Shown: positions 16,201 to 39,470, counted from the stretch's first letter. The stretch is DNA of 64,000 nucleotides from Lepidodermella squamata (GCA_047495785.1 JBLDXI010000055.1:496001-560000); one strand, 5' to 3'. Program-made: numbers and translations. The notes: generated by a model not told the origin, from the sequence alone.

Positions 16201-17371
16201 CAACTACTTCGAGAATAATCATGATACGTGCCTTTACATGGCCAAAAATGGAGTAATTTCTTTTAATACCCTTACAACTACGTTTCGGAATAACATAACA
16301 AATTGAATCTAGGTGAAATTCGTTAGGTGCATGCTAAATGGAAAATTTTCGTCGTGCCAACGTGGAACGTCATGTCCTTCTAACCAAGTTAGCGACGGCA
16401 TGACGTATACCAATTTTGCTCATTGCGTTCGAGGCATCACATTCGGTAAACCATTAATTGCGACCTATAATTCGATTATCTAATTTCGATTTAAAATCTA
16501 GTTAAATACTTTTTACCTGACCCAACTCCGGTCACGCGCGATGTCGCTGAAACCACTTGCGAAGTTAATTCTGGCATTCTGGCCAAGGTTGTTACTAGTC
16601 GAGATCGCGCGGAAGCTACCTTGCTTATTGCCGATGAAAGTTGGGCCGGAATAAAGAGTACCACCAAAGTTTTTACCTGGTCGAGTGGGCAAGAAGTAAA
16701 ACCTGAGATGTGGATCGGCAACTCTCCTCCTCAGGAAGATTCAGGAGCTTGTAAGCTATTTCCGTCAATTTTTTATTCTCATAAAAAAAATGTTGCCCCA
16801 TAGGCGTGGCCTACTTCCTCGATCAGGGATTGGCCGCTGCGGACTGTTACAACGACAAATTTTTTCCGTTCTGCCAGAATCGTAATAACTTGGTAATTTT
16901 TCCAATTTTCCCCCGAGCTTTTTATGGTCACTTTTGGCTCGCATAGAATGATATAAAATTCAACCCAACAGCAAGGGTAGACCGTGCGGGTGCTGACCAG
17001 TGGTGCAGATTCATCTTCAGCGGCAGAGCCGCTCCCGATCTAAATAACGATGATACTGTCTTGGCAAGCCTCAAGACTGTCATTTCGAATCAACAAGCTC
17101 CCTATAACGAGGGAAAAGTATGGGTTGCTGCAAGTCGACGGATAATTGACTACAAATGGTCGGACGATACGGCTGTAGGCTCGAGCAGCCCACCATGGAG
17201 CCCCGGATACCCCCAGGGCACGCAATTTTGTGAGAAATTCAATGCGAACCGAACTTCAATCTTCATACTAATTATTGTTTTTTTGCAGGCGCATCCATCT
17301 CGTCTAAAGGCCTTTTTCAAGACGCCGATTGTGACACCGCCCTCCCTCCACTATGCGAGCTTGTCAGCTAG
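13228..17371 (+). CDS. Secreted mosaic protein: signal peptide - inactive astacin (M12A) domain - EGF-like - CUB - kringle - three 4-Cys repeats - two C-type lectin domains; about 20 small exons
   Basis: MLIPLLLITVGSLSHVAEC; WPSST..PINYAF; GMDVWSKETCVTF; CTSDYG..QFISIAPSC; RLIGRVLGLVEEHLRPDRDLYIRINWANI; YDYSSVMHP; SPNYPNSYPAGQDCTYFI; GYDYQG..CLNW..CRNP..PFCHT; CTL-like WAGI..FTWSSG..W..NSP and WVAA..YKWSDD..W.PGYP; stop TAG 17369-17371. Confidence 0.75.
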
Positions 17372-17817
17372 GCTGGAATAGTTGACTTGCAACTATCAAA
17401 CCTTAACTATTTCCTTTTTTGTGATTAAACACTTTCCTCGTGTGTGTATTTCGTTGTATATCAAAACGCTTTATTCAATTTTCAGTCATCCAAGTGGGCT
17501 AGAATTGATGCATCCATATGCATACAGAACATGAGCATAAATGAGTTTTGGATATAACATTGGTAAATTACATTGAGCGATCAAATCAGCTCAGTATAAA
17601 TTAAAACTTCGAGCGCTGTAATTTTCAATTTTTTGTTTGTTAAAAAAGTCACAACACGGAGAATTCCAGCGGCGATACTGATATATAATAATTATTGAGG
17701 GGATTCATGTATATATAGGAAGAGAAGGGACTAGTACAAAAAGGAGAATTCTCTGCGTCGATTTATCAGACGATCTCATTATGGCGACAATTTGACGGAT
17801 ATTATAACAGGGGCGGG

Positions 17818-20800
17818 TCACCTCGCATTCGGGTACCAGGATCGAGACCGCCTCCGCCGGATCGAATAAAACATTGTCAAGACAATGCCGATAGCAGCAA
17901 CGAGACAGAGACCAGCAAAAGCCAGAGTTAGGCCTGATGTGAAAAAATCATAAGATTACATGGTAAAAACTCGATGAAAAACTTACCTAGTTTCTGATGG
18001 GAGAATTCATTTTCTGGCATTATCGGGTACGGGTCGAAGGTGAGAGCAGCCGGAACTGAAGCTTGGCCAGCCATTGAGCACCCTCCACCGCCAGCGCCGT
18101 CGCCAGACCATGCCTCATCTCCCCACGCATCCGACGACGTCAAGTTGTAATCAATCGGCCTGCATTCCGTTGCCGAGTGGGGGAAAGCTCTTCGTTCGAT
18201 CGAAGTCGCCGCTCTGAACCCAGACCGGCAGCGGCACACGCCTTCCGTACAGCTCTGGTCGTACCAGCGGTGGTAGCACTGCCGCGTGGCGTCGCACCGT
18301 TCGCCGCGTAGGGCGAAGGCGAGCCCGGCTGTTGGCGAAACGGGCCGGCAACGGCGGCCGTCCGACGCCGGTTCCCAGCCGGACAAACACTCGCAGACGC
18401 CGCGCTCGGAGCAGCGGCTGTTAAACGCCTCACAGGCTACCGTGCTATCGCAGCGTTGGTTAAGCTGGACGGCAGGCAGGCACAGGGTGTTGTTCGCATT
18501 CAACGCGAAACCGTCGCGGCAAACACAGGCTGGCGCGAAGCAGTTGCGCCGTAGACAGTCGGAATTGCCCGGGCAACGGGTGTCGCCGTCACATAGGCCG
18601 TAAGGTAGGACCTGGGCGTTGTCTACTAGCGCTTCAAGGCGGGGTGGCGGCAGGCGGCGGCGAACTGCCGACGCAAACCGATGTCGATCTCCAGCTCGGA
18701 GGCTGGCGTGGAAAACTGGCGCGAGGATAGCCTCATGCGGCGCTGGGTTTTCGTCGTTTTCATCAGCCGCCGCGACCAGGACAACAGGCGGTTGACCCGA
18801 TGCCATCGTGCTGATCGGAGACGCTGGCCCATCGTAATGCCAGCCGACGAAATCGCCAACAATCGCGAAGAGCTGGCTTTCGGGTGGCACGCGATACGTC
18901 AGCACAGACGAAGCATTCAACGCATCGTTATTCGGCGAAATCGAGATGGTATTCGTGCCGACTAAGACAAATTCCTGATGAGAATCGCCGCCTCTATCCC
19001 GCTCTAGCCCAGTTTGGTGGGACATTGACCCAGACGCAGGTTCGACAATGCGCCAGATGTCGATGTGTACGGTGAACGAGTCAGACGAGGCGTATTCGTC
19101 GTTCAATTTCGGCGACAAAAATCGCCACTCTTTCACAAGACCCGTGCAGCGAATCGGCAGGGTGGTGAAAATTACCATTTGACTGACCTCCTGCTGCAAA
19201 TCGGCCGTGACAACGGCGGATGAGACCGAAGCGTAAGACTTGGATGCTTCGTTGTTGTTGCGATTTTCGGATTTTTCGCCGCTGTTTTTCGGCCTGTGGC
19301 TGTTCCAGAGGCAGTGGCCAATCGGTCGGCAAGTTGGCAAAGTCGACCACTGGCCGTCGCTATTACAGGTGATAGAGGCCGAGCCCAGCATGTGATAACC
19401 TTCATCACAGGCGAAACGATGAACAGCAGATTGGCGCGTCCCGTGGCCTGTTATTAAGGTGGCATGAGGTACTGACGGAACAGCGCCGCAATCGATGAAT
19501 GAAGCTGTGACGATAGCTTGAAGAGCCGGGATTCTCCAACGTTTCCTTTCGGGCTCATCGAACGCGATTAACCCGTTACTAACCATGATATCGCCATGAC
19601 CAGCCGCCTTAACGCGGCCGGAGAATAGTTGATCACGTGACCAAGGCCGTGGCTCGAGGTCATCTGCGAATGGGATAACCAATTGAGACGCGGCGATGTT
19701 GGCGCTTGGGTAGTGGATGCCGACTACGTCACCACGCCGCACTGCTACAGTCACCGGCTGTTCGATATTGTGAGTTTCAACCCCGTGAGCGCCGTTAGTT
19801 CGGATCGTATTCGCGCCAACCAGGCGATAAGTCGCCGAATCGTTGACCTGCCGCCATATGCCGAGGTAGACAGTTTGACCAGCCGCGAGACTGTAAAACC
19901 GCCATGACGTTACAATGCCGTCGCATTTGAACTGCATGGACGTGAAAATCATGAGATAGGACCCGGATGACGTGAAATCAGGCCGTGCTGGGGGTTCGTA
20001 GCCAGCGACGCATAACGGCTTTGGCACGCACATTGGCGCCGGGGTCCAGCCGCGTTCGAGGCAAGTCGAAATCCCTGTTCCACGCATTTCGAAATGCTCG
20101 AAGCAATGATAAATCGCCTTCTGGCCGACAGTTGTCAAAGCACTCAACGGCTGGGTCGGGATTGCTGCCAGTGACGTAGCGGATCTATCGAACTGGAATG
20201 AGCCCCAGGATATCGCCTTTGGCACTCCGCAGCCAGGTAATGCTATAAATTAAATCAAATTAAATTTAGTAATTTTACGGAATTTTAGACTCACTTAGGG
20301 CCAATGCGACAATGGCTGGTGTCCTAGCACTCTGTTGCTTTTGGCTGTGTTGCATTGATACATAGTGATAGCCGACGATTTCCGACCTCAAGTCGCGTTC
20401 TGCCAAGCGGCGGCTCGCAAAATCGTGCATTTCTACCGCGCTTAAATTAGCCGCCTCAATCGACTGACTCGTCCAATGAGCAATCGCGCCGATCGATGGG
20501 CCAGACTCGCCGTCTTGCCGCTCAATTTCGCCGTAATGCAGTCCGATAAAACAGTCGTGGTCGACCATTATTCGAGACGTTGTCGGCACTCGAAGTGATA
20601 TGAGCCCCGGTGAGGTTAGGGTGAAGTTGTTGGAACCAACTAGTTCAAACCATTCGCCGTTAACTTTACGCCAGACATCTAGGAAAACTAGAGTAGGCTC
20701 AGTTGCGATCGAATACACCTTCCATTCCACGATTTCAGCCGAGCAGCCGAACCGCATTGACGGGTACATTGTCAACCAACGACCCGGCGGGTTGACAGTT

Positions 20801-23800
20801 TCGGGTAGCGGCGACAACGCCCAGTCATGGCCAACCCGGCAGTTGGGTGTTTCAGGGACGCAGAGCGGAGCAGCCGGGGTCCAGGAGCCATCGGCCTGGC
20901 ACGAAATCTGAGCAGTCCCAGCCAACTGATAACCAGAGTCGCAGGTGAATGTGACCACGTGACCAGGCGGGGCGTACAACGACGACCTGACTTGCCCATT
21001 CATTTCCAAGTCGTTCATCGTCGCGTCGAAATTATGGGTGCCATGAGCTACGGCAGCTGGGGCAGCGCAACCCCGGGCGGGTCGGATTAGCAGTTGAACA
21101 GCGGGACGAGTCGATCGCGAATGCTGCTTCTCAACCTCGGACGGCGATGCGCTAAGGGCGACGTAGTTCACGCTGGACATAGCCATCGAAATATCAGCGT
21201 CGTTCAACGGCAAGCGGTAGCACGACGGGTAGGGCGAATTCCGGTGCCGGGTTGGGTCCGAATCGCTGATTGGCGGGATGACTGGGACATCAGACTCTTG
21301 CTCGTAATGAACCCCGATAACATCGCCGATTTGAACTCGAATCGCTGTAGTTTCGTCCAGGGTGATCACGTGACGGCCAATAGCATTAGCCGCCCACCTG
21401 GTGGTTCCGACCAGCTGGAACCGATTGTCACTCAACGGCCGCCAGACCCCGAAAACTACAATACTACCGTCATCACGCTGGGACAAAAAGATCCAACGAT
21501 CAGCCTCGCCAGTGCAAACGGCTCGCATTGATGGGCAAATCGATAAATCAGCCGAGTCAGTTATCGCGTCGGCTAGAACTGGTTCGTTGTGGTTGCTGTG
21601 GAAAACCGGGGCGGGCATGTATAACGCGCTTGGAATTTCATTCGGCACGACTGAGCCTAACCGACACAACGGATTGCCAACGTCGATACAACGGGGCAGT
21701 TCAGACCACGATTGGTCAGCGGCTTCGCAGGTGACCTTGGCCTTACCGACCAGTTCATACCCGTATTGGCATGAGAATTCGTAAGCGACCTGGGGTACGC
21801 TATTAGTGCCGTTGTGGTTATTCAGGACTAATCGGTTCGAAACGGCTGTGAGGACAGAAGGAGGATCGCCGCAGTCGACAAGTTCGCAAGTTGGCGGGGC
21901 AGACCACTCGCCGTTTGATAGGCAAACAATGGCTGAGTCACCCTCTAATAAATAGCCGGGTAGACATGATACGTGCCGATGAGCACCAATCTGCAAAAAA
22001 TCAATTTTTCAAAAAAATCCGATTTTTCCCTCGATTTTTCTTACCTGAGTTCCATTATCAGTATCGCTGAGCAAAATGCTGTTAGGCACGTAAGGAATCG
22101 CATCCAATCGGCACGATATCATTTTGGTTTCGCAGACCGGTAGTCTGCCAAATGAGCCGTCAGCATGGCAAGTGACTGTGTCATAGCCACCGACTGGCGA
22201 GTAACCAGGTGCGCACTCAATCATAGCAGTTTGACCGGCTAAGGCGACCAGCGGGTCGGCTAAAACTGTCGGCTCTGCGATGAGTTGAAGCCTGCCGTTT
22301 TCGATATTCGGGAAATTTCCGCACGATGTTAGGCATTTCGGCAGCGGTTTCACCCAACGGCCGTCGGTTCCGCATGAAATCACGTTGTTGCTACCCGGTT
22401 GACCGGTCATTGTAAGGATGAAGCCGTTTTCGCACTGGACCGTGACCCGATCGCCGGCTGTGAAAACCGGGCTCTCCATGCTAAGGGCAGAATCGAGGGA
22501 AACCTCCGCCGAGGCAGGTGTCAACAATCGCGCATTTTCGATTATTGGCAAAGGTTCACATTGCACTACAAAAAATTAAAAAATACACCAAAATTAAATT
22601 AAAAACTCAACATTTGAAAAATTTAAAATTCATTTAATTTTTAATTAAAAATGGAAAATTACAGCCATACTTACCAACGCAACGAGGCATAACTGAAGGT
22701 GTCCACGTTCCTTTATCAGAGCACGTGATGATATTTCGCCCGACCATCAAAAACCCGTTATGACACGAGTACGAAAATGTATCACCGGCAGTTGCCACCT
22801 TAATTGTATTGCGTTCAACGCCGCCCTCGTAAATGTAGTCGATCGAAGCGTGGGAAACTCGAGGCGGTTCGCCGCAGGACCGAACGCAGTTAGGCAACGG
22901 CTGGGACCATGTGAAATTCTTCTGGCACATAATTGCTGGTGGGCCGGTGTTAATGAAGCCATCAGGGCAGTCATACTGCACTGTATCGCCGATTTGAGGA
23001 CCGGCCGAGCCGCCGTACGAAAATTTCGCCTCTGCGCCCTCGATTTGAGGCGGCGGTGGGCAGTTCCTAACGCAAGATGTTGGCGGTTCAGGGTTCCATT
23101 GACCATTTTCGGCGCAGGTTATCGTGACCTTGCCCGATGCAACATTCTCCGTAGTCGAGTTGAACCGATAGCCCTGATCGCAGGAATAGACTATTCGCTG
23201 ACCAACAGGCGCCTCTTCGCTTTCAGAAGCTGACTGAGAGGTATCGCCTCCAGCTACGATTAATCGGCCATGTTCAAGCGGTGGCGGAGCTTCGCAGGTA
23301 AGCGGACCCTTTAGCAATAGGCCTACAGCAGGTGGGGCGGCTAATCTCGCTTTCGCCTTCCTCGGAGCCGTGATGAAACCAGGATTTCGCATGGCTTGTC
23401 GGATGTCAGTATCGAATTTTTGATAGGCGAAGCAATCAAAGTTGTCAATAGGCCCGCCTTCATCCATATGTACCTTATGGCCAATAGGCGAGATCAGGGA
23501 TACAACCGGGTTGTTGCTTGCCTCTTCGTAATAGACACCGATAAAATCACCCCGCATAGCCTTGAATTGATCACTGGGTGGGACACCCTTGATAACGCGG
23601 CCTTTATGGGTGACGCGGAATTTATTGGCACCGACTACAACAAACCGACCGTCCTCGATTTTGCGCCAAACCGACAAAATCACCGAAGCGTTATCGTCTC
23701 TGTCTGACAAAAATATCCATTTGTCAACAATTCCAGTGCAATTAACGACCAATTGCGGGCATAGCAGAGCTTCGGAAGATCGAGCTGATTGAACTACGAG

Positions 23801-26800
23801 GGGTTCGGAGTGGGGCAGCGAGGTTGGAGGGACTGCTGAACACTCTTGGCTCGGGTGGTGCTGGCTCCTTTCTTTCGAGCTGTCCTCCAGCGCGCCCTTT
23901 GAATTGAACACGTTTTCGACATCGGCACAACGAGGCAACGAGTCGGTCGGCCACTGCGGGTTCCCATCTCCGGCCTCTTCGTCGATGGTGCACGAAATCT
24001 GCCGTTGTCCGACCAGGACGAACCCAGGGTCGCATTCGTACTCAGCGACTTCAAACGACCGCCGAACAGCGTAGCCGTGGGCGATATTGGGCGGGGCGCC
24101 GCATTCTAGCATCGCAGCAGTAGTTCCGTAGGCAGAATCGGTTTCATACTCAGTTTCATCCTCGTTCACAGTCGAAAATCCAGGCCGTTTCGTCGTATGT
24201 TTCGGCGATTTCCGACCAGAGGCTGTTCAATATTGAATTATTAATAGTTTATAATCGATTTTAAATCTCACCTTTATTCGCTAATTTACGCCACATTCGC
24301 GGCTTTTGACCAGCATCGCCAGCTTCTTCGACGTCCATCGGAGCGATTGAAAAGCAGTAAGGGACAGACGGCTTCCACTGACCAGCTTCGCAAGTCACCA
24401 CAGAAGGGCCTTCAAGTCTGAACCCTGGTTTGCATTCGACCAGGCGTTTCGAGCCTGGTACCAAGCCGAAACCGCTGACGACCAACGCGGCGGTTCCAGG
24501 GTCATTCGAAGTGGATGGCGCAAGATCCGGGCAAAGCGGCGAGGCTAAAAAATCAAGCAATTTGTTAGAAAGCGTGCATTTTTTAAGCAGTGATTTTAAG
24601 CGTTAATTTTGGCACCTACAGCTCTAAATGAAACAAGACCTCATTTTTATGACAAATTTTATTATGACACAAATCTTTCTTTATCCAAAGTTCGACCATA
24701 AAATATTAAACGAATGATATAATAATCGTAATACGAGTGATAATCGAGATTCTGCGGAGAAAGCTGACGGCGAATTTGGTGTTTAAAAAGCGCATTTTTC
24801 TTTAAAAGCTGGGCATTTTGTTAAAAAGCAGCGCTCTCGTCGATGCAAAATGACGTAAAAAATCTACGGTTATCGCAAAGCTAAAAGCATTTGATGGCAG
24901 TTAAGCTTTGAAACATGACATAATCTCCTCTCGGATGTTGCTGAGATAGGAGATTTGAGGTAACGATCGTGCGTTTTTTTTCTTCTATCAACTACTTGTG
25001 TTACTTATCAAAGCCTTATAAATGTTGTCCGATGTCAAATTAGGCGCCCGTTGGTACTGAAACCAAACAGGGCATAGGACGCGCTGCATTACATTGCCCT
25101 GTAGCGATTTGCAGTAGCGGCGGATGCAGGACGGCGCCGAGGCGTTCCAGTTACCGCCGTCAAGGCACTCGATCGCCGCCGCGCCTACCATCACGTAATC
25201 ATCGAGGCACTTGTAGCGAACCTGAATAGGCGCCCGCTCCGTGCCATTCAACGTCCGCCAGCCCGAGTGGGGCACCATAGGCGGCAAACCACACCGGCCT
25301 AACGGCTCATTCGACTCATCTGAATCGTCTAACAGTCTCACAACTTTCAATATCGAAAATGTTAAATTGCCTCAATCAACTCACCATTATCGATGTGCCC
25401 TCTTAGAATATACTGCCGCGGCTCGACGCTAGTTCCAAGGAAGAGGAAGCCACGTCGGCTCAGCTCGGACATGACCCTTGAAGACAGGTAGTTGCCCGTG
25501 TAACATTCGCCGATTCCGATGTCATTTCGGTAGGGCACAATGCCGGTCAACGCGCTATCGGCGTAGTAGATGCCGATGAAATCGCCGACTTCAACGCGAA
25601 TCTGTTCGGACGGCTGAACTTCGTACATGTGAATGCCCGGACGCGGTTGAACTTTGTTGGCACCAACCAATCGGAAAGCACCGTTCACTTCAGACTTCCT
25701 AAAAATCAGAAAAAAAACTGTTAAGAAGGATTCATTTTAAAATTAATGAACTATTAATTTAATTTAATTTAAATTAAATAATAAATTATTAATTATAAAA
25801 TAAATTAAATAATTAAATAATTGATAAAATTAATTAATTTCAATTTTAATTAAATTTAATTATTTTCTAGATTTTTCTAACCTCCACACGCTGACGAAGG
25901 CAACTATAGCACCATTAGCGGATGGCAATGCTCCGATTTCCCAGTGGTTGACGTAGCCAGCGCATGAAAAGAAAGCTGAGGGGCAAATCGCCATTTCAGG
26001 CGTGTTCGGCTCAACTAGTGGGCCGTTGCTGCTGATGGGCGATGAAGGTCCGGCGAAGCAGCCGTTGTCAACCGGAGGAGGTTCGTGCTCGCAAGATGGC
26101 GCAGATGACCACTGGGTGCCGATGCAAGTCACACGGCCTACGTTGACCACATCGGCGGTCAGGCCCATGCCAGCGGCTAATTGGAAACCAGGTATGCAGG
26201 CATATCGAACCCACTGGCCGTCAGCGTAAGGTCCGTCGTGCGGCTGGCCGTAGGAGTTCTCGACAATCTGCGAGTTGGCTACAACAGGCGGAGGTCCACA
26301 CTTGGAGTTGGCCACTGAAAGAAACAGCGGGATATTAGATCGTTATTAAACAAAATATTTGAGGTTAAATTATTGGAAAATTGCGAACTTGGCACGCATT
26401 TAGGAGCAGAAGACCAAAAGCCTTGTTGGCAAGTGACGACAGAATCGCCTTCAAGCTCGAAGCCTGTCTGACAGCGGTAGCGGACGCTGTGCCCGCGACC
26501 GACCAGCGGTTCCGAGAAAGCATTAGCGACAAAAGGCGGCGAGCCGCATCCTGAATAAGTTAGAAAAAGCGTGAATAGAAGCAGTAGTTAGAAAGTGTTA
26601 AGCAAAAGCATGCAAACCCGTGCATTTCGGCACACGTGACCAATTTCCGCTAGTCATGCACTGGATAACAGGTTCGCCAGACATTTGAAAGCCCGGCACG
26701 CATTCGACGGGGATTTTTGTTAGTACCGGATACCGTGGCTCGGCTTCTTCTTTCAACACGTTGTTATTGTTAGGGTCGAAATCTGACGTTATCGGCAGAA

Positions 26801-29800
26801 CAGGTTCGGGCATTTCAGCCGGTGATGAATTCGGGAAAATAGGGTCACGCATTATCGCATTCAAAATTGAAGGAGGCGAACCGCATGCAACCGATTTAAC
26901 AGCTTGAAAAGAAGGGGTAATAAGTTCAAGCAAGGCAACTTCATGCTATTTTTTTAAGGTGGGCATGCTAATACGGGTATCCCTGCCTACTTTTAACACA
27001 GGACGGTGGTATCGTCCACCGGCCTGATTTTCTCTCGCAAAAGACCACAGGAGGGCCGAGTAGGTCGAAATGAGGTTTGCAGTAGTAGAAAAGCAGTGAT
27101 GATGGGTGGTCCTTAAGGCGGCGGAATCTACCGTTTCGAACGAACGGCGGTGGCGAGATGCAATTACTACCAATGTAACCACCGTGGATCAACGCCGCTA
27201 AAACTAGCGATTTGTCAATTTGACACACGGGTGGCTGCGTCCAAATGCCATCTGGGGAGCAGTCTACGTAAGGGTGGCCTATCATTTGGAACCCAGGCAG
27301 GCATTCGAAACGGTACCGGGCCACGGAGACAGCCGGCATCAGCCGCCCGGTCTCGTCGGCCACGATAAAGCTACTAGACATGTTGGAGTAATAACCGCCG
27401 TCGTACAACGGAATCAAGTAACGACGTGAATTTTTCACAATAGGGGGTCGGTAAGCACAGTTAGGGTGGACGGCTATTATTAGTTAAGCGAAGCAGTAAA
27501 TTTGTTAGAGATTGTTAATATCGATAAAAAATGACTGAAAGTACCTTGACATGTTGGTAGCGTAGCTGGCCACAATCCATCCGGACCGCAGGTGATGAGA
27601 TTATTTCCGATAAGGGCAAAACCAGGTAGGCACTGGAACCGAGCTGCCGAAGATCCGCCAGGTCCATTGACCATCTCGTAGAATCCATTCGCGAACGGCG
27701 GTAGTGGGGCGCAGTTTTTCGAGGACGAAACGCCTCTCGGAACGGCTGAGTTAGCATTTCGGCTAGAGATATTCGGTTTGCAAGACGGGAGAGCGCTCCA
27801 AGCGCCGTTGTCGCAAAAAACATTTGGATCACCCTATTTATTTTAAATTTAAGGTGGACTTTCGAGATTTTCGGAAGGACTTACAGAAAGGTGATAGCCA
27901 GGCAAGCATGAAAATCTAGCACCAACACGGCCACCAATGTTGTCCAGGGCAGTTCGAACCGAGTTCGGAATTTGTGGAATCGGAGCGGAGCAACCTGAGC
28001 GGGGAAAAAATGTAGGTTAAAATTTCCGTCGAGAGTTGAGCAACAATCGCGGCTGAATTAGGAGCAGCAATCGTGTGCCCTTCAAACAATTTTGCATAAA
28101 CATAAGCATGCGCGATGTACGAACGATGCAGGTTATTTTTTCGGAGAAAATTTACAGTGATCTCCTAAGCATTGACGTTAATAACACAAGCAAAAAAAAC
28201 AAGCAGTGCTTAGCCATTCAAAAAACCCGTAATAACTAATAACTTTTAGGCGCCTTGAAAATTGAGAAAAATAAAAATGCAGATCATAATTAAATGGCAG
28301 AAAATCGAATAGAGATCGAAAAACTACCTTGTTGCTCGCAGGTGGGCAATCGATTAGGTGACCATTTGCCTTTGCTGCATCGCACAATAGGTACGACACC
28401 CTTCGGCATGGCGTAGCCTTCCGAACAAACCAAAACCGCTGCAGCCGCCGCACCGCTGGTAATCAGGTGATAGGAACCACCCTCAAAAGTTGGCAAATCC
28501 GGGCAAGCTAGCTCAGTAGTTGTCATAGCAGTAGTCGTTGTTGTCGTAGTCGTTGTAGTCGTAGTCGTTGACCGGCTAGTTGGTATGACATCCCGCATCG
28601 GTACTACAGCAGGGAAGGGCGGGATATTCAGCGGCAAAGTTATGTTCATCATTTCCTGTTCCTTGTTCGGAACAAGTTCGCAACGAGGTGCCTCCGGCTC
28701 CCAATCTCCGGTCGCGTTGTTGCAAGACAAAATGCCAGCAGTACCGCCATTGGCGTACATTCGCCGATTGACAAGGCAAATGTATCGAATTCTCGTCGGG
28801 TTCGACTGTGTACCGGCTATAACTGCAAATTTAGCCCCGTCGACGAATGGTGGCGGCTTGCATGTCTGCTTCGTAGGTTTAGGGATAGGTTCACACCTCG
28901 GTACTGTTGTCCATTGTTCGCCTGGTAGACAATCGGCGACTGGGGGTCCGAACAGTACAAACCCGGGCTTACAAACGAATCGAATCGAACGAACAGCGCC
29001 GTTGTGCTGGGGAGACGGTACAGCTAGGAAGTAGCCGTTGAGAAAATGAGGCATTTTCCAACAAACAGCTTCAGCTGGTGTTGTAGTCGGCATTTGATCA
29101 TTCAGGCCTCGGGGTAGCATAGGCAACGGGGCTCGAGATGGCGGAACAGGCCGCGGCGGGATTTCAGCCTGGCTAGGACGGGGTAGCGCCCACTCTGGGT
29201 TGTATTCCTCAGCGAAAAATTGAGGTGGAGTGACTACGATTGCTTCCTTCTCCTTAACGCATCGAGGCGGGGCGGCCCACATGTTGCCAGGTAGGCATTT
29301 TACATCGACAGAGCCAACTGGCTGGTAGCCGGATAAGCAGTGATAGCGAATTAGCTGGGGGTAACGGCGAGTCCCTCGAATCACCTGATAAACCGCGTTT
29401 CTAACCACCGGCATACGCGTCGTGCAGATAGCATTTTCTGGCGTGGTAGACTTCGTAATTTTCGAAGTTGTAGTACTAGTTGTCGTAGTTTTAGCTGATG
29501 TCGTCGTGGTAGATGCGGTTGTAGTCGTTGGAGTTGTTTTCGGAGCAGGAGTTGTCGATTTTGGGACGAAAATACAGTAAGGAGGCTCGGACCAATAGCC
29601 GGACTTGGAACAGCTTATAACCGATTGGCCGACTATTTTCAGCGGGGAATTACACTCGTATCGCACAGATGACTGCGATATCTTCTCCGCACGCGCATGA
29701 ATGACGATCGGTTCCGGTCCACATTCGGAATATTCATCTAGAGATCAATAGACTTGAGATAAAATTGAGGTGGGATTAGCGCAAACTTACATGGAGAATC

Positions 29801-32800
29801 GTCCATCTGAGAGTTGAAAGCGTCGTTCATCGGCGGCATTTCTTCCCTAATAAATTCATCCTCAGCAGATTTTGAGTTGGGTACACATTTTGGGGGCGGG
29901 GCAGTTGGATCCAGTTTGCGCCAGCCTCCACTCACACAGCGAATCCGGCTATCCCCCTTAATAGTGTAACCCTTTCTCTGGCAGTGATATTCAATTTCTA
30001 ACGGGTTCTCGATTGAGCCTTCCAGCAGCCAGATATGCGCGTCTGAAATAGTCGGCGGCTGCTTGCATTTTCGAACAACCGGAGGCGGGACTGGCTCAAC
30101 GGGCACAAGGTGTCTCGGGGCGTCGGACGGGCTCCGTTGCAGAATTGGGACAAATCCGAATGGTTTGCCTTGACGAGTTGTAGTGGTAGTGGTTGTAGTA
30201 GCAATTGAAATTGTAGTAGCTGTATCAAGAGGCAGGCATTTCGGCGGTTCGGCATCAACGGCTCGTGACCGCCAAGAGCCGTCAATGCAATACAGCGTGT
30301 GATTTCCGACCAGGCGATAGCCAACATGGCAGTCGTATTGAATAATTCTAGGCTCGCCGGGTATTTCAGGTAGTGGGAATATCACTGAATTAGGGACACT
30401 GGGAGGTGTGCCACAGTGCCTGAGACGGCCATCTGAATAAAAAATGATTAGGTTAGATTTAATTTTTTGTAACTTGACGAACTGTCTGGCCGACATAGCG
30501 GCGGGGCAGGCGTCCAAATGCCGTCGTTCCGGCATTCAATTTCAACAGGGCCGGTCGGTTCGAAGCCGTTGTAGCAGACGTAGCGGATTCGAACGACCTC
30601 GGACATTTTGTCGCCGGCTAGGATGTGAAAGCGGGCGTTAGCGACGGCCGGGATCATTTCGCACGACGATGATTTGTACGACGATTGCGACATCAAACCG
30701 TCGGCGAGATTATTAGCGCGATCGTTACCATCAGTTTCAGAAGCTGTTTATTTGTTTTTAGCATGCGAGGATGCGTTAACAAAAGTAACAAAAAAAAAGC
30801 AAGCAGGTGCATTCATTCTTTTTACATGCTGAGGGTATCAAAAATAAAAGGTGCGATTTTGAAGGAGAAGGAGGTGCGAAACTAAAAATAAAACTACAGG
30901 GAGATATAAGCCTATCACCGTTTTACGCGAAGGGAAAGAATCTGATTAGTATACCTCCAGGTGTTAGACGCCATGTTGATCGTGTAGGTCCGAAACCGGG
31001 AAAATTCCCTAAGAATGGGAAGCTGCCTGAAAGCATCCCTCCCCCGAATGACTGACCTCCAAAAGACGAAGCAACAGCAGCTGAAAATACGAATGCATTC
31101 AAAAAACAATCAATTCAAATTTTTTCGAAACAAACCGGCATCTCCATCAACGAAAGGCAGAGTCTGGCCCGGGAACATACCGATACCACCTCCAACGTTA
31201 ACACCGCCAGATGCAGACCCGCTTCGAGCATTTGCTGCGACAACGCCACCAGGGAACCCGTTTCCGAAACCGGGGAAACCAGCCGATCCGCCGAAACCAT
31301 TCATTGGTGGAATAGCAGCAGCCATTGCCGGAAGGCCAGATCGAGAGCCAGGCTGTTCGAGAGCCTCTCCAATGACACCGTTAGCTTGAACAGATCGAAC
31401 ACCAGGGAAGACGCCGCCATTCGGGAGGCTGCCTGAAATAACACCCCCTGGGACCACGGCCAAGCCTCCACCTAATCCATTACCCTGACCATGACCGCCA
31501 TGGCCGCCGTGACCGCGTCCACCTGGAATGATACGCTGCACTGTTGGAATGATCGGCGGAAGCATGCTGGGGAAAACAGGCGGTTGAAACACGTTGATTT
31601 CCTGTTGCGGAGGCTGATGGCTGAAGTGAGGCATCTGGCTCGGGAAAACAGGGAAATTAGGCCGGTTGACGATAGAAATGATCGGGGTTGGGTTGATCGG
31701 TTGGCAAAGCGGCACAACAGCCGGCTGCCATGTCGCGCAGTCCTTACTCCTGACACAGGTGAGGCGAACAGGTCCGACCAGGTTGTAGCCGTCATTACAG
31801 CAGTATTCAACCGAAAGAGGCCAGCTTCCGAGTTGAAGAATCGCACGCCACGTACCGTAGACGACGCCCGGTGGCTGACCGCAATATTCCTCGGGCACCG
31901 TTTGATTGGCGCATTTCGGCGGGCGAGACCAAAGTGAGGAAATACATGACACTATCGGGTCGCCTTCGAGCTGGAAGCCCGACAAACATTCGTACTGAAC
32001 ACTGGTAGGTTGGCCGTTCTTGGATGCGATGATTTTGGTCTGAGAGTTGGCCACTGTTGGAATGGGGCCGCATAGTGCAGTACACACCGGCCTGGGCTCC
32101 CAGTCGGAACCGCGGCAGTAGATCGTGGCCTGGCCAATGAGCTCGTAACCAGACAAGCACTTGTAAGTCGCGTATTTCACAGTTGTATTTCCATTGAAAT
32201 CGCCCGAGTCTGTTGTGGCACCGTTAGCGATCGAAGGAGCAGCAGGGCACTTGACAGAAGCTATAAAAGTATGATATTATGAAAGCTGATTGCTGAATTT
32301 GCAATGACTTACGAGGAATCGGTTGGCAAGTTGGTGCACCCGGAGACCAGACACCGTTGGCACAACGAAGAACAGGAGATCCAACGAGGCCGAAACCTGC
32401 GTCACACTCGAACCGAACAGCGACTGGTAAAGCATCAGTGCCCTGGATGACAAAACGGCGGGCATATGCGACACCTGGTGCGGGGCCACAGTCAGCCATG
32501 CAAGTCGGCAGGGTGGACCAGGTGTTCGGCGCCACGCAGGAAACGACCGGGCTTCCGATGAGACGGTAGCCGTTATTGCAGGTGATTGTCGCTTGCTTGG
32601 TCGAAGCGCTTTCCAACAGCTCGACACGGGCATTTTCAACTCGAGGCGTGTTAGGACAGGCCGCTGAAATCAAAACAAATTTAGAGATGAAATCTTTGGA
32701 AAATTTTCTTATTACGTCGGCAACGAGGAAGAGGGGTCTGCCAGGCACCATCGACGCACGGAACAACGTTGTTACCAACGAGCTCATAGCCAGTGTTGCA

Positions 32801-35574
32801 GGCATAGGTGGTTGGGTCGTAGCCCTGAGGGTCGAAGTCAACAATTGAACCTTGCTCGATTTGCGGCGCGCTGGGACACGGATCCGTTGTGCGACCAAGG
32901 GCGCATTTCATCGCCGTCATTCCGTTCGGGACGCAATACGACTTCCCGGTATTGCCGGCGGGCAAGCACTGAGCAGTGCCTTTGCATTGGAAAGTCGCAG
33001 CGCAGATCTTGCAATCGTCGATTTTTTCAATGGTCGAACAGCCCCATTTGCGGAAAGACCGGCGGTTCTGTTCACGACGCAGTTCAGCCGAGCTCGAGAA
33101 CAAAATGCATGTGCCTTGACGGAACGGGTTCGAATACGTGAAAGAAATGCATGATTGGGTGTAACGGCACGCCAATTCGCAGTCAGCTGCGGTTTGCAAC
33201 TCAGGGCCGAGCGGCAAAGTGTTACCATCAAACGCCAAATCGAATCCTTCACCGTCAGATAGCAGCTTGGTATCGCAGTCAGCTTAAAAAATTAACAATT
33301 ATTTTTAAGGAGGGCTTTTCAAAATCGATTTACCCTTGCAAAGCTTGACCATTGAGCGCACATTTGGAGTGAAATGAACCTCAGTACTGACGTAAGAGAA
33401 AGTGCGGCAAGTTTGCTTTGATGAGTCGAAAGTAACTGCGTAACAGTTGGGTTGATCGCGGCAGAACTGCCAGCAAGCATTTTCTGTCGTAGCGCCAGCA
33501 ACAACGGTGTTGATACCGCTGAATGTTACCTCGTTCAGCGTTTGCTCAGGACAATCGGCTTTTTAAATAAAAAGAGACATTTTTTAGAATGTTGTTTGTC
33601 TGTCGGCAAATAGTACGAAAGCCATTTAATCGAGAGAAAAATAAAACGCGGCGCCAAATGTGTAATTGACCCCAAAATTAGCGCGCATTATCTCGGTATA
33701 ATAAAAAGATGGGTCATCTCTCAGTGTAAAAACGCGCTTGTTTTGTTGAGCGTAAAAACGTACTCGTTCCAACGTATATCTGTAACAGCGGCAATAGACG
33801 GCGGCGAGAATTTGGGTCCACTGAAATAGGTGTTCCAGCCACGGCGTTGATATCTTCCACGTTGATATCGGCGACTTGAGCCACGTACAAATCAGACGCG
33901 CGTTGGCTGCTTGGCAGATTCGATGAATCATACATGTAAACAGCGCCTTCGGTTGTCGTGCGCTTGTACAGGATACCGAACACATCGCCAGCCTGAACGT
34001 CGAAACGCTCCTGCGCTGGTACTAGGTATTGAACTGTGGGCTGTGTTCTCTTCACAGTGATCTGATTGAAGCCAACAAGGCGGTAGTTGTTATCGCCACT
34101 CGGACGCCAAACGCTGAGATAAACAGGCGTGTTCCCGGAAACTGGGTTCGCTAAGAAAACCCATCGCAAGAGCGATCCTGAGCATTTAATCGGGTTGTTC
34201 GGAAATAAAATCAGCTGTGTTTCCCTAAACGAATTTTGGCTTGTTTGCGTGTCCGCTGAAAACGGCTGGCCCCAGACGCAGTCGAAAGCTGAAATAAGGT
34301 CATAAAATAAATCGGTACAACGCCTAAAATGGGAAATTACTTGAAATAGAAGTTGGGGGACGCTCCTCAGCTAAAATTTGGATATCGAGCGGGTCATGCT
34401 GCAATTCCGCTGTAATAAAGAATAACTAAAAAAAACTCGAAATCTCAAAAATTCCGAAAAAATTACCGAAGCGTTTAGGCGACTGTTGGATAATGGGGCG
34501 ATTCGGCGAGCAAATGGGCGGAGTTGACCATTGTCCATCAAGCATACATGTAACTACTGACGGGCCCATCAAATCGTAGCCTAGCATGCAGCTGTAGGTG
34601 ATCTCACTGCCAGCGCTCAAAGTGTGGCCGTAAGGAATGATAGCCTCACCGGCGATAACGGCGGGCGGGGCTCCGCACAGGCCTTGATGACCACCAAACA
34701 GATCTTCATCTGATGAGCACAAGCCCTGCGTAACTTTAATGTCATCAACAGCTACATAAAAATCTTGGCCGCCAGCTCCGTTTCGGGCTTCAATAGCAAT
34801 CTAGAAATATTTCAATGCAAATGACTATGCACTAATCTAGTTCGAAATAACTAAAAAGAAATTATACCCTGAAAGGCAGATTATTCGCGTGGAATGTACG
34901 TTGAACGTTAGTCCAATAGCTGCCGAAGGATGAGAAAGATAAATTTGCGAGGATAGTTGAAATCGGGTCAGCGCCATAAGAGTCCTGGATGATGTAGAAA
35001 GCCAAACTTCCCGAATTGCTGTTATTTTTAGCCGCCGACGACTGGCGCATCAACGAGTAAGCGTTGAAGCAACATAGCGTTGACGAGCAATTTATGGGAC
35101 CGGTAGTCAGTGCTGTTTCAACACGAGTCAGCGAGGCAGGTGCGCCGCCGCTCGCGAATAGCAGCGTACCATCAGCTGCATCTTTCGTATGGTCGTAAAG
35201 TATGGTCGAGTTTGACAAAATAACAGCCTGCCGCCGGAACCAGCGCAGGTCGCTTTCGTCGTCACGGTTCGGCGCTTCACCATCAGGTTCAACCAGTTCG
35301 AAATCGCAGGCACCGGATTCGAACGTACATTCATAGACAGATGACTGCTGTGTTTCGGTGGGTACAAATGACACGTCACTTGCTGACGTTTCTACCGCGC
35401 TGTTGTCCGGAACGAGAAAATCATCGAGCGAGATTTGACCTAGTACTAAAGGTGAGGAGGGAGAGAGGAAAAAGTAATCACAGCGGTCATTATATTTCGT
35501 GGCGGTCATTAAAACTAACCGGCTCGACAGCTAACGGCGCTTAATAATAAAAATGAAGCTATGACTAGCTTCAT
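17818..35574 (-). CDS. Giant type-I membrane protein (roughly 4,800 aa, >30 exons): signal peptide - MAM - CCP - X - 2 PAN/Apple - about 35 CCP/Sushi interspersed with Gly-rich and Thr-rich linkers and 7 copies of unnamed domain X - EB-like Cys repeats - TM - short tail
   Basis: ATG35574 MKLVIASFLLLSAVSCRA; MAM (CTFESGACDF..DHT..AVDDIKV); repeated C-x-x-PP...Y-x-C-x-x-G[FY]-x-L-x-G...C...G-x-W...P-x-C; PAN (C..[FA]C....C...T[FY].....C); last exon GLTLAFAGLCLVAAIGIVLTMFYSIRRRRSRSWYPNAR* ending 17818. The junctions checked (first, last and those across 30740-31136) are frame-compatible; not every junction was verified. Confidence 0.75.

Positions 35575-38408: not shown

Positions 38409-39470
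<1,062 letters not shown>

What the first reader, a model, noticed from the sequence alone, without database searches (positions are those of the whole stretch)
17818..35574. Giant CCP-array membrane protein with an unusual mosaic architecture
Seen: one minus-strand gene of about 17.8 kb with a signal peptide, MAM, two PAN domains, about 35 Sushi modules, mucin-like Thr tracts, EB-like Cys repeats, one TM helix and a ~15-aa tail (RRRRSRSWYPNAR). Known: long CCP arrays occur in CR1, factor H, CSMD, SVEP1 and LEV-9, but I know none that combine MAM+PAN+CCP+EB with the repeated domain X. Inference: a very long surface rod for adhesion, glycocalyx/cuticle scaffolding or complement-like recognition, with no signalling domain of its own. 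This is the best candidate for an undescribed system in the window.
Basis: partly seen in the sequence, partly recalled or inferred. Interest (0 to 1): 0.75.

Follow-up and report, generated by a model that had tools for sequence, protein, structure and literature searches.

The report
Giant Sushi-array membrane protein, gastrotrich
A microscopic freshwater animal (probably the gastrotrich Lepidodermella squamata) has a real 17.8-kb gene for a roughly 5,000-residue cell-surface protein made of about 50 binding modules. It is a lineage-specific variant of the known giant adhesion or matrix proteins, and its unnamed repeated module turns out to be a widespread lectin-like fold.

Summary
On the minus strand, from the ATG at 35574 to the TGA at 17818, I could thread one open reading path of 28 exons. 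It gives about 5,063 aa and 546 kDa.

The modules, in order:
- signal peptide
- a divergent MAM domain
- two PAN domains
- 35 Sushi modules
- three Thr-rich tracts and one Pro/Gly-rich spacer
- seven copies of domain X
- three EB modules
- one TM helix and a 15-residue basic tail

At least seven of the 27 predicted junctions are corroborated by ORFs of a related species (52-68% identity). Those ORFs are continuous across them, and at two they skip exactly the predicted intron.

Domain X has no Pfam family, but it is not unique to this gene:
- 1,323 cluster representatives match it. The ten with a species name are molluscs, nemerteans, echinoderms and hemichordates, always in extracellular mosaics.
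- It has at least 150 matches in this genome, often in alternating X-Sushi arrays.
- It folds (pLDDT 96) as a jelly-roll sandwich of the lectin/CBM type.

I found no characterised ortholog or identical architecture.

My best reading is a passive, multivalent surface or cuticle-matrix rod, similar in design to CSMD. This function is inferred, not tested.

No transcript evidence could be obtained, so the single-transcript claim rests on gene logic and on the colinear ORFs of the related species.

The scan also noted the same stretch separately as s1-422896, on the same DNA.

The parts
35520..35574 (-). Exon 1: start codon and an 18-residue signal peptide, followed by a GT donor
   Evidence: Direct reading; splice model
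34710..35341 (-). Divergent MAM domain (model aa 52-240), split by a 67-nt phase-0 intron at 34801-34867
   Evidence: No Pfam hit. Language-model neighbours are all MAM. Aligns at E 4e-9 with a paralog ORF carrying Pfam MAM at 3e-54.
34510..34677 (-). Sushi 1
   Evidence: Pfam Sushi E 3.9e-10; local HMM
33771..34286 (-). Domain X, copy 1
   Evidence: Alignments A1 and A2; local HMM i-E 7.5e-50; related-species ORF P0033 covers it
33335..33556 (-). PAN/apple domain 1
   Evidence: Pfam PAN_1 E 2.3e-7, above cut-off
32879..33280 (-). PAN/apple domain 2, followed by a short unassigned Cys-rich linker
   Evidence: Pfam PAN_1 E 1.8e-5, above cut-off
31704..32878 (-). Sushi 2-7 (exons 7-9)
   Evidence: Pfam Sushi; local HMM; P0033 is continuous across junctions 7/8 and 8/9
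30744..31703 (-). Pro/Gly-rich low-complexity spacer. Includes the doubtful small exons 10-11 (31080-30927 and 30881-30826).
   Evidence: Composition and splice model. The end of exon 9 is conserved in P0033, after which both species' ORFs read on into apparent non-coding sequence.
26091..30663 (-). Sushi 8-22 with three Thr-rich mucin-like tracts (30152-30232, 29436-29564, 28497-28595). Contains a 333-nt intron at 27995-28327.
   Evidence: Pfam Sushi; local HMM and composition
25392..26015 (-). Domain X, copy 2, split by a 183-nt intron (25699-25881)
   Evidence: Local HMM; related-species ORF P0110 runs across the split
23927..25293 (-). Sushi 23-25. Contains the longest predicted intron (24545-24995, 451 nt).
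   Evidence: Pfam Sushi; local HMM; sequence of the gap
23303..23848 (-). Domain X, copy 3
   Evidence: A1/A2 alignments; local HMM i-E 5e-65; P0004 covers it
21688..23296 (-). Sushi 26-32 (exons 24-26)
   Evidence: Pfam Sushi. P0004 is continuous across junction 24/25 and skips exactly the intron at 21991-22044.
21073..21675 (-). Domain X, copy 4
   Evidence: A1/A2 alignments; local HMM i-E 1e-62
20860..21069 (-). Sushi 33
   Evidence: Pfam; local HMM
20293..20850 (-). Domain X, copy 5
   Evidence: A1/A2 alignments; local HMM i-E 4e-64
20028..20231 (-). Sushi 34
   Evidence: Pfam; local HMM
19500..20021 (-). Domain X, copy 6 (the copy that was folded)
   Evidence: AlphaFold2 with alignment A3: pLDDT 96.1, pTM 0.91, all-beta; fold searches
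19329..19490 (-). Sushi 35
   Evidence: Pfam; local HMM
18615..19322 (-). Domain X, copy 7 (with an insert)
   Evidence: A1/A2 alignments; local HMM; 68% identical to P0001
17988..18614 (-). Three EB modules (also matching cEGF) and a juxtamembrane stretch. This is the part best conserved with the related species.
   Evidence: Pfam EB E 1.6e-14 in 3 stretches; alignment with P0001
17818..17933 (-). Last exon: the single TM helix, a 15-residue arginine-rich tail and the TGA stop
   Evidence: P0001 has the same layout of TM plus short basic tail.

Best explanation
This is one real gene for a type I membrane protein of about 5,000 residues. The whole mass is extracellular. It carries roughly 50 small disulfide-bonded binding modules and is anchored by one helix with a 15-residue basic tail.

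Layout (shown):
- The membrane-distal head is MAM, Sushi, X, PAN, PAN.
- The middle is a long Sushi stalk. Thr-rich stretches (probably O-glycosylated) and one Pro/Gly-rich spacer interrupt it.
- The membrane-proximal third alternates X with Sushi and ends in three EB modules.
- X is a jelly-roll sandwich of the galactose-binding/CBM/lectin type.

How it most likely works (inferred): the protein stands as a long, partly stiff, multivalent rod on an epithelial surface. By analogy with other Sushi arrays it would be well over 100 nm long. With seven X, two PAN and one MAM module it would bind glycans or matrix proteins. That would tie the cell membrane to the glycocalyx or cuticle, or mediate cell-cell or cell-substrate adhesion. 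It would not signal by itself.

It is one member of a large, lineage-expanded family of X-Sushi array proteins. Its design parallels the CUB-Sushi alternation of CSMD proteins.

Odds: the gene is real about 0.95; it is one transcript about 0.7; the passive adhesion or matrix role about 0.5.
For: One coding path:
- A single stop-free path runs from a canonical signal peptide to one TM helix.
- 21 of 27 introns are phase 1 and lie between modules.
- G+C is 0.49-0.58 across most of the gene, dipping to 0.45 around the long introns at 24-26 kb, against about 0.42 in the flanks.

Junction support from a related species:
- ORF P0033 covers exons 4/5-9, P0110 exons 20-22, P0004 exons 24-26 and P0001 exon 27.
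- They are continuous across at least seven predicted junctions.
- At two they skip exactly the predicted intron: 33284-33334, and 21991-22044.
- The contig lengths recorded for these proteins coincide. This suggests the N-terminal and C-terminal parts share one contig of 41 kb or less.

Only one entry into the secretory pathway:
- No other in-frame start with a signal peptide exists downstream.
- Every downstream exon encodes disulfide-rich extracellular modules.

Modules: Sushi, PAN and EB by Pfam; MAM by transitive homology.

Domain X:
- High-confidence beta-sandwich model.
- Best structural matches at Z 9.4-7.8 are phage tail-tip, baseplate and capsid-associated proteins, the lectin-like domain of Cwp84, and the N-terminal region of two esterases (a carbohydrate esterase and a polyvinyl-alcohol esterase).
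- At Z 5-6.6 come PHR domains, F-type lectins, discoidin domains and CBM32.
- In other animals X sits in extracellular mosaics next to lectin domains (C-type, SUEL, discoidin), in polycystin-1-like proteins and next to Sushi.

Family context: at least 150 X matches in this genome, with alternating X-Sushi arrays at five other regions.
Against:
- Four predicted introns are unusually long for this gene (451, 333, 205 and 183 nt). The 205-nt and 183-nt ones are bridged by related-species ORFs. The 451-nt and 333-nt ones are not.
- Exons 10-11 are doubtful.
- The 451-nt gap follows an in-frame stop and contains an AATAAA about 110 nt before the next acceptor. Earlier notes of this scan say this genome uses spliced-leader operons.
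- The function rests only on module types and fold class. A shared fold shows no function, and Z around 9 is only slightly above the usual background for this tool (note).
- The assembly probably derives from amplified DNA, which can give chimeras (PMC11660948).
Confidence: 0.55

Rival explanations
1. The span holds two or more genes, possibly cistrons of a spliced-leader operon. For example, a secreted N-terminal protein (exons 1-9, or 1-22) followed by a separate membrane protein. Alternatively, internal polyadenylation gives shorter secreted isoforms alongside the full-length form.
For: - Long gaps lie at 30744-31135, 27995-28327 and 24545-24995.
- If not spliced, exon 9 and exon 22 each run into a stop within a few codons.
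- An AATAAA lies about 110 nt before the acceptor at 24545.
- Earlier notes report spliced-leader operons in this genome (s1-407664, s1-374127; not tested here).
- The related species' proteins appear as separate ORFs.
Against: - No in-frame start codon with a signal peptide exists downstream of any gap. The one candidate, at 30812, cannot be spliced in frame to exon 12.
- All downstream modules need the secretory pathway.
- The end of exon 9 is conserved up to the predicted donor in both species. After it, both ORFs read on into apparent non-coding sequence.
- The separate ORFs of the related species look like the output of an ORF caller stopped by introns. They begin inside modules and end by reading into introns.
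Confidence: 0.22
2. It is an immune or complement-like component. The long Sushi array would work as a receptor or regulator for thioester proteins, as CR1 and factor H do for C3b. The lectin-like X, PAN and MAM modules would recognise microbial surfaces.
For: - It has 35 Sushi modules, the module class of complement regulators.
- The genome holds at least 11 loci with the thioester domain of the C3/A2M family.
- X has a lectin-like fold and is strongly expanded, as many invertebrate recognition families are.
Against: - Sushi arrays also occur in purely structural and synaptic proteins.
- Nothing links this gene to the thioester genes by position or co-variation.
- The EB region and the X domains are well conserved with the related species (52-75% identity). 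This does not suggest fast diversification.
Confidence: 0.13
3. It is a gamete or egg-envelope recognition protein.
For: In hemichordates X sits at the N-terminus of polycystin-1-like proteins that carry a REJ domain. From my own knowledge, relatives of that class include sea-urchin sperm receptors for egg jelly. Mucin-like tracts and lectin-like modules are common in egg coats.
Against: This is pure analogy. There is no ZP, REJ or polycystin part here. From general knowledge, not tested here, the animal reproduces mainly by parthenogenesis, so there would be little selection for such a large gamete receptor.
Confidence: 0.05
4. It is an assembly chimera or a decaying pseudogene that only looks like one gene.
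For: The probable source assembly was made from amplified DNA, which is prone to chimeric reads (PMC11660948).
Against: - There is no frameshift or in-frame stop along a 15-kb coding path.
- Order and module content are colinear with the ORFs of a related species.
- The cysteine patterns of all 35 Sushi modules are intact.
Confidence: 0.03

Closest known systems
CSMD1-3 (CUB and Sushi multiple domains proteins, vertebrates)
   Same: Giant type I membrane protein. A beta-sandwich module alternates with Sushi, there is a long pure Sushi run, and it ends in one TM helix and a short cytoplasmic tail. (The CSMD architecture is from my own knowledge.)
   Different: No CUB domain was found anywhere in the gene, and X did not match CUB structures among the top 50. 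The alternating part is membrane-proximal here. MAM, PAN, EB and mucin-like spacers are added. The likeness is one of design, with no sign of common descent.
Complement receptor 1 / factor H type Sushi arrays
   Same: Dozens of tandem Sushi modules forming an extended rod. CR1 is also type I with a short tail.
   Different: Those proteins are made of Sushi only. Here 7 X, 2 PAN, 1 MAM and 3 EB modules plus low-complexity spacers interrupt the array. No link to thioester proteins was shown.
SVEP1/Polydom, LEV-9 and Hikaru genki (invertebrate and vertebrate Sushi mosaics)
   Same: Extracellular Sushi-rich mosaics used in adhesion or synaptic matrix. Hikaru genki was the only named hit of the word search, and through Sushi alone (E 1e-6).
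   Different: Their defining partners (vWA, HYR, pentraxin and EGF for SVEP1; WAP for LEV-9; Ig for Hikaru genki) are absent here.
Uncharacterised X-bearing mosaics of other invertebrates: Haliotis and Babylonia astacin-ApeC-CUB-Kringle-C-lectin-Sushi-X; Ptychodera and Glandiceps polycystin-1-like; the Patiria vWD/discoidin/SUEL protein; Lineus X-PAN
   Same: They share domain X at E 1e-16 to 1e-37, often next to Sushi, PAN or MAM.
   Different: They have entirely different overall architectures. None is characterised, and none combines MAM, PAN, a 35-Sushi array, X, EB and a TM helix.
Pfam DUF4082 and the Cwp84 lectin-like domain (bacterial surface proteins)
   Same: The same broad jelly-roll class. 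One X copy hits DUF4082 at E 0.0013. Cwp84's lectin-like domain matches at Z 8.8 over 147 residues. The language-model search also lists the Lectin_like family.
   Different: All of these are below Pfam cut-offs. Only 1 of 33 family members touches DUF4082, and sequence identity to the structural matches is 7-11%.

Membership tests
Sushi/CCP-containing protein (PF00084) | Sushi modules with four conserved Cys and the Trp, scoring above the Pfam gathering cut-off | tested here: met
   Every large ORF scores 23-134 bits against a cut-off of 20.7. A local HMM finds 35 modules.
PAN/apple domain (PF00024) | Match above the gathering cut-off | tested here: met
   31.0 and 25.0 bits against a cut-off of 21.4
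EB module (PF01683) | Match above the gathering cut-off | tested here: met
   54.1 bits against a cut-off of 24.3, in three stretches
MAM domain (PF00629) | Match to the Pfam model above cut-off | tested here: not met
   No Pfam hit even at E up to 10. No PDB sequence hit.
MAM domain (PF00629) | Homology to a bona fide MAM domain, collinear over the domain | tested here: met
   Exon 2 residues 34-182 align at E 4e-9 with residues 143-270 of a paralog ORF whose residues 146-304 match Pfam MAM 1-158 (E 3e-54). Language-model neighbours are all MAM.
CSMD family | CUB domains alternating with Sushi | tested here: not met
   No CUB match in any exon of the gene. The alternating partner is X.
CSMD family | Type I topology with one TM helix and a short tail after a Sushi run | tested here: met
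SVEP1/Polydom | vWA, HYR, EGF and pentraxin domains together with Sushi | tested here: not met
   None of these families appears. The only EGF-type match is cEGF, which overlaps the EB modules.
Complement regulators of the RCA type | Binding of C3b/C4b-like thioester proteins by the Sushi array | not testable with these tools
   Only the presence of at least 11 thioester-domain loci in the genome was shown.
Domain X family (unnamed) | About 160 residues with a conserved Cys, Trp, Trp-Arg, Val-Gly, Gly..Tyr and a C-terminal Pro motif, and significant profile matches | tested here: met
   Seven copies at i-E 1e-22 to 1e-65. The profile finds 1,323 representatives. Conserved columns are in A1 and A3.
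DUF4082 (PF13313) | Match above the gathering cut-off (28.4 bits) | tested here: not met
   19.2 bits for one copy only; 1 of 33 family members

The most novel reading that the evidence does not exclude
Domain X is a so-far unnamed lectin-like recognition module of marine and freshwater invertebrates. Gastrotrichs would have expanded it, together with Sushi, into a repertoire of at least 150 modules in many giant alternating arrays. This gene would be the membrane-anchored flagship of that repertoire. The family would then be a lineage-specific surface recognition system (for microbes, self/non-self, or patterning of cuticle scales), analogous in logic to other expanded invertebrate receptor families. 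It would be more than a set of passive matrix proteins.
Probability: 0.15. Interest if true: 0.7.

Novelty: new variant of a known kind. Interest (0 to 1): 0.42.

Why it matters
Three points give this some value.

- It provides a curated model of one of the largest genes of a phylum with almost no molecular data. It is also a concrete candidate for how the gastrotrich epidermis is tied to its cuticle or glycocalyx.
- It shows that the 'repeated domain X' is a real domain absent from Pfam and confidently foldable. It has more than a thousand representatives across Spiralia and Ambulacraria and a large expansion here, so it deserves a family entry and a binding assay.
- X-Sushi alternation is an independent reinvention of the CUB-Sushi design of CSMD proteins. 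This is useful for thinking about why such alternating rods evolve.

For a specialist in extracellular mosaics the gene is not very surprising. Lineage-specific giant mosaics are common.

Tried and rejected
**Searches that gave nothing**
- Pfam and PDB sequence searches for MAM in exon 2 were blank. I settled MAM by transitive homology instead.
- A PDB profile search with X was blank.
- Foldseek against the PDB gave only one match below E 0.001, a phage capsid protein at TM 0.55. I used the wider aligner instead.
- The DUF4082 link for X holds for 1 of 33 members only, below cut-off. I kept it as a lead and not as membership.

**Attempts to reach transcripts or a related locus**
- The word search with exon 23 found no candidate.
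- The JGI metagenome scan with the conserved C-terminal alignment found no relative.

**Readings considered and rejected**
- A 39-codon ORF at 30812 has a signal-peptide-like start. I rejected it as a second gene start. It lies in the pyrimidine tract before the acceptor of exon 12 and cannot be spliced in frame.
- The plus-strand neighbour (astacin/CUB/Kringle/C-lectin) was tested for X or Sushi, to see whether it forms a split mollusc-type protein with this gene. It has none, and it lies on the other strand.

**Model building and housekeeping**
- The first splice model mis-joined several modules. It was replaced by a model with retrained intron-length and site scores.
I redid it with coordinates and HMMs only.
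- The joined 28-exon protein was never handed to any search, fold or family tool. Those were done exon by exon, by reference. The joined model was used only in local scripts, for counting modules and converting coordinates.

Full report
**Origin of the window.** The window is G000:C55:496001-560000 of a 121.2-Mb, 151-contig assembly. Earlier notes of this scan take the animal for a gastrotrich, probably Lepidodermella squamata. The published assembly of that species has 122 Mb in 157 contigs (PMC11660948). That is consistent, but I did not test identity further. Nothing suggests human sequence.

**Is the gene there?**
- The minus strand between 17.8 and 35.6 kb is packed with long open segments, and G+C rises to 0.49-0.58 over most of it (0.45 at 24-26 kb) against about 0.42 in the flanks.
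- The ATG at 35574 opens 18 hydrophobic codons that end at a GT donor.
- The last exon (17933-17818) encodes the only TM-like stretch of the whole model and a 15-residue arginine-rich tail before TGA.
- I wrote a small splice-aware dynamic programme.
- It threads the span with 28 exons and 27 introns. Most introns are 50-57 nt, 21 of 27 are phase 1 and nearly all fall between modules.
- The product is 5,063 aa, about 546 kDa, with 211 Cys and 29 N-glycosylation sequons.
- Weak points of the model are exons 10-11 in the Gly-rich region and the long introns of 451, 333, 205 and 183 nt.

**Independent support for the exon joins.**
- The word search with the last large ORF found P0001 (578 aa, from ENA). 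It is 68% identical and runs through EB, TM and a short basic tail.
- The exhaustive profile search brought in further ORFs of the same related organism. By tblastn against the window they are 52-64% identical.
- They cover exons 5-9 (P0033, with its N-terminus resembling exon 4), exons 20-22 (P0110), exons 24-26 (P0004) and exon 27 (P0001).
- These ORFs are continuous where I predict junctions 5/6, 6/7, 7/8, 20/21, 21/22, 24/25 and 25/26.
- At two junctions the alignment gap equals the predicted intron almost to the base: 33284-33334, and 21991-22044.
- These ORFs start inside modules and end by reading into apparent introns. They therefore look like ORF calls on genomic contigs of a species that has fewer introns.
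- The contig lengths recorded for the clusters coincide (70,433; 40,866; 31,367; 30,899). This suggests the N-terminal, middle and C-terminal pieces are neighbours there too. That is an inference from equal lengths.

**One gene or several?**
- I could not obtain any transcript evidence.
- The case for one gene is logical. There is one signal peptide, at the 5' end, and one TM helix, at the 3' end.
- Every exon between them encodes disulfide-rich extracellular modules.
- A scan of all three frames found no other start codon with a hydrophobic leader that can be joined in frame.
- The end of exon 9 is conserved up to the predicted donor in both species, after which both ORFs read on into apparent non-coding sequence.
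- Against it: unspliced exons 9 and 22 would terminate within a few codons.
- The 451-nt gap also holds an AATAAA about 110 nt before the next acceptor. Other notes of this scan report spliced-leader operons in this genome.
- I put a single full-length transcript at about 0.7. Shorter secreted isoforms made by internal polyadenylation are a live possibility.

**Modules.**
- Pfam finds Sushi in every large ORF, PAN_1 twice, EB three times (with overlapping cEGF) and nothing else above cut-off.
- An HMM built from the gene's own Sushi copies counts 35.
- MAM is not seen by Pfam or by PDB sequence search.
- All 30 language-model neighbours of exon 2 are MAM clusters, the best at 0.95.
- The only paralog of exon 2 in the genome is an ORF with two Pfam MAM stretches (E 3e-54). 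Exon 2 aligns with it collinearly from MAM position 1 at E 4e-9.
- I therefore accept a divergent MAM domain.

**Order of modules along the protein.**
1. Signal peptide
2. MAM
3. Sushi 1
4. X1
5. PAN, PAN
6. A short Cys-rich linker
7. Sushi 2-7
8. Pro/Gly-rich spacer
9. Sushi 8-22, with three Thr-rich tracts
10. X2
11. Sushi 23-25
12. X3
13. Sushi 26-32
14. X4
15. Sushi 33
16. X5
17. Sushi 34
18. X6
19. Sushi 35
20. X7
21. Three EB modules
22. TM helix
23. Tail

**Domain X.**
- Six complete copies align with an invariant Cys, Trp, Trp-Arg, Val-Gly, Gly..Tyr and a C-terminal Pro. A seventh copy is split by an intron.
- No Pfam family covers X. One copy touches DUF4082 at E 0.0013, and only 1 of 33 family members does so.
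- A PDB profile search is blank.
- The profile search of 1.84 billion representatives gives 1,323 proteins at E 0.001 or better and 172 at 1e-10 or better.
- Named examples are all automatic or 'uncharacterized':
  - gastropod proteins with astacin-ApeC-CUB-Kringle-C-lectin-Sushi-X
  - hemichordate polycystin-1-like proteins with X near the N-terminus
  - a starfish vWD/discoidin/SUEL-lectin mosaic
  - nemertean X-PAN proteins
  - a brittle-star 'hyalin-like' protein
- With a 33-row alignment, AlphaFold2 gives pLDDT 96.1 and pTM 0.91, an all-beta sandwich.
- Foldseek finds nothing close.
- The wide structural search gives Z 9.4-7.8 for phage tail-tip, baseplate and capsid-associated proteins, the lectin-like domain of Cwp84, and the N-terminal region of two esterases (a carbohydrate esterase and a polyvinyl-alcohol esterase).
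- At Z 5-6.6 it gives PHR domains, F-type lectins, discoidin domains, neuropilin b1b2 and many CBMs.
- X is therefore a jelly roll of the galactose-binding/CBM class. A binding role, probably for glycans, is the natural inference. The fold alone does not prove it.

**Family context in this genome.**
- The X profile has at least 150 matches (the listing is capped), clustered on several contigs.
- In eight fetched stretches from five regions, the order of X and Sushi matches on one strand is a near-regular alternation.
- The membrane-proximal third of the present gene follows the same pattern. The gene is one member, perhaps the most elaborate, of an expanded X-Sushi family.

**Surroundings.**
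- Downstream on the plus strand, convergent with this gene, lies a secreted mosaic gene. It has an astacin domain, a weak CUB, a Kringle and a weak C-type lectin (13.9-17.4 kb).
- That is the same order as the N-terminal half of the gastropod X-bearing proteins, but it has no X or Sushi.
- Further out lie an ankyrin-repeat gene (10.3-12.8 kb), a zf-C4H2 gene fragment (38.5 kb, minus strand) and an RRM/TPR gene (42.2-44.3 kb). Nothing suggests a functional cluster.

**Mechanism.**
- Shown: topology, module content and order, the fold class of X, conservation in a related species, and the family expansion.
- Inferred: the protein is an extended, partly glycosylated rod that binds several ligands at once and has no signalling tail of its own.
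- The closest design is CSMD, where a beta-sandwich module alternates with Sushi before one TM helix and a short tail. This gene is not a CSMD member, because it has no CUB.
- Complement-like regulation is not excluded. The genome has at least 11 thioester-domain loci, but nothing links them to this gene.

**Verdict.**
- It is a new variant of a known kind of protein. It contains a widespread but unnamed domain.
- Interest is moderate.

The joined spliced protein was not submitted to any search or fold tool. All such calls were made exon by exon, by reference.

Noticed in passing
window 13900-17400, + strand: The convergent neighbour gene encodes astacin (14155-14577), a weak CUB (14804-15085), a Kringle (15334-15879) and a weak C-type lectin (16495-16800). 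This is the same order as the N-terminal half of the gastropod proteins that end in Sushi-X (P0015, P0018, P0020). No X or Sushi is detectable in it here.
   Followed up: partly
G000 C19:852000-880000; C15:4982000-5042000; C55:100000-120000 and 144000-152000; C19:3238000-3252000 (loci L003-L010): The genome holds at least 150 matches to domain X. The fetched stretches show near-regular alternating X-Sushi arrays on one strand, so several more giant X-Sushi genes probably exist.
   Followed up: partly
L002:814-2199 (-), i.e. G000 C15 about 5004438-5005823: A paralogous open frame carries two clear MAM domains (Pfam E 3e-54) directly beside an X domain (C15:5005419-5005871). X-MAM adjacency also occurs in P0050 from another organism.
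   Followed up: partly
window 33284-33334, 21991-22044, 22566-22678, 33559-33763 and others: The related species (ENA ORFs P0033, P0004, P0110) has continuous coding sequence where this genome has introns. This implies substantial intron gain or loss between two fairly close relatives (52-68% protein identity).
   Followed up: partly
window 30696-30812, - strand: A 39-codon ORF with a signal-peptide-like start lies in the pyrimidine tract before the acceptor of exon 12. It cannot be spliced in frame to the gene and is most likely chance.
   Followed up: yes
G000, e.g. C13:714982-721993, C38:318301-326829, C9:1712157-1713050: At least 11 loci match the thioester domain of the complement C3/alpha-2-macroglobulin family, so the animal has a sizeable thioester-protein repertoire.
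   Followed up: no
window 10304-12791 (+), 38541-38861 (-), 42239-44263 (+): Other neighbours are an ankyrin-repeat gene, a zf-C4H2-type fragment and an RRM/TPR protein. None has an evident functional link to the giant gene.
   Followed up: no
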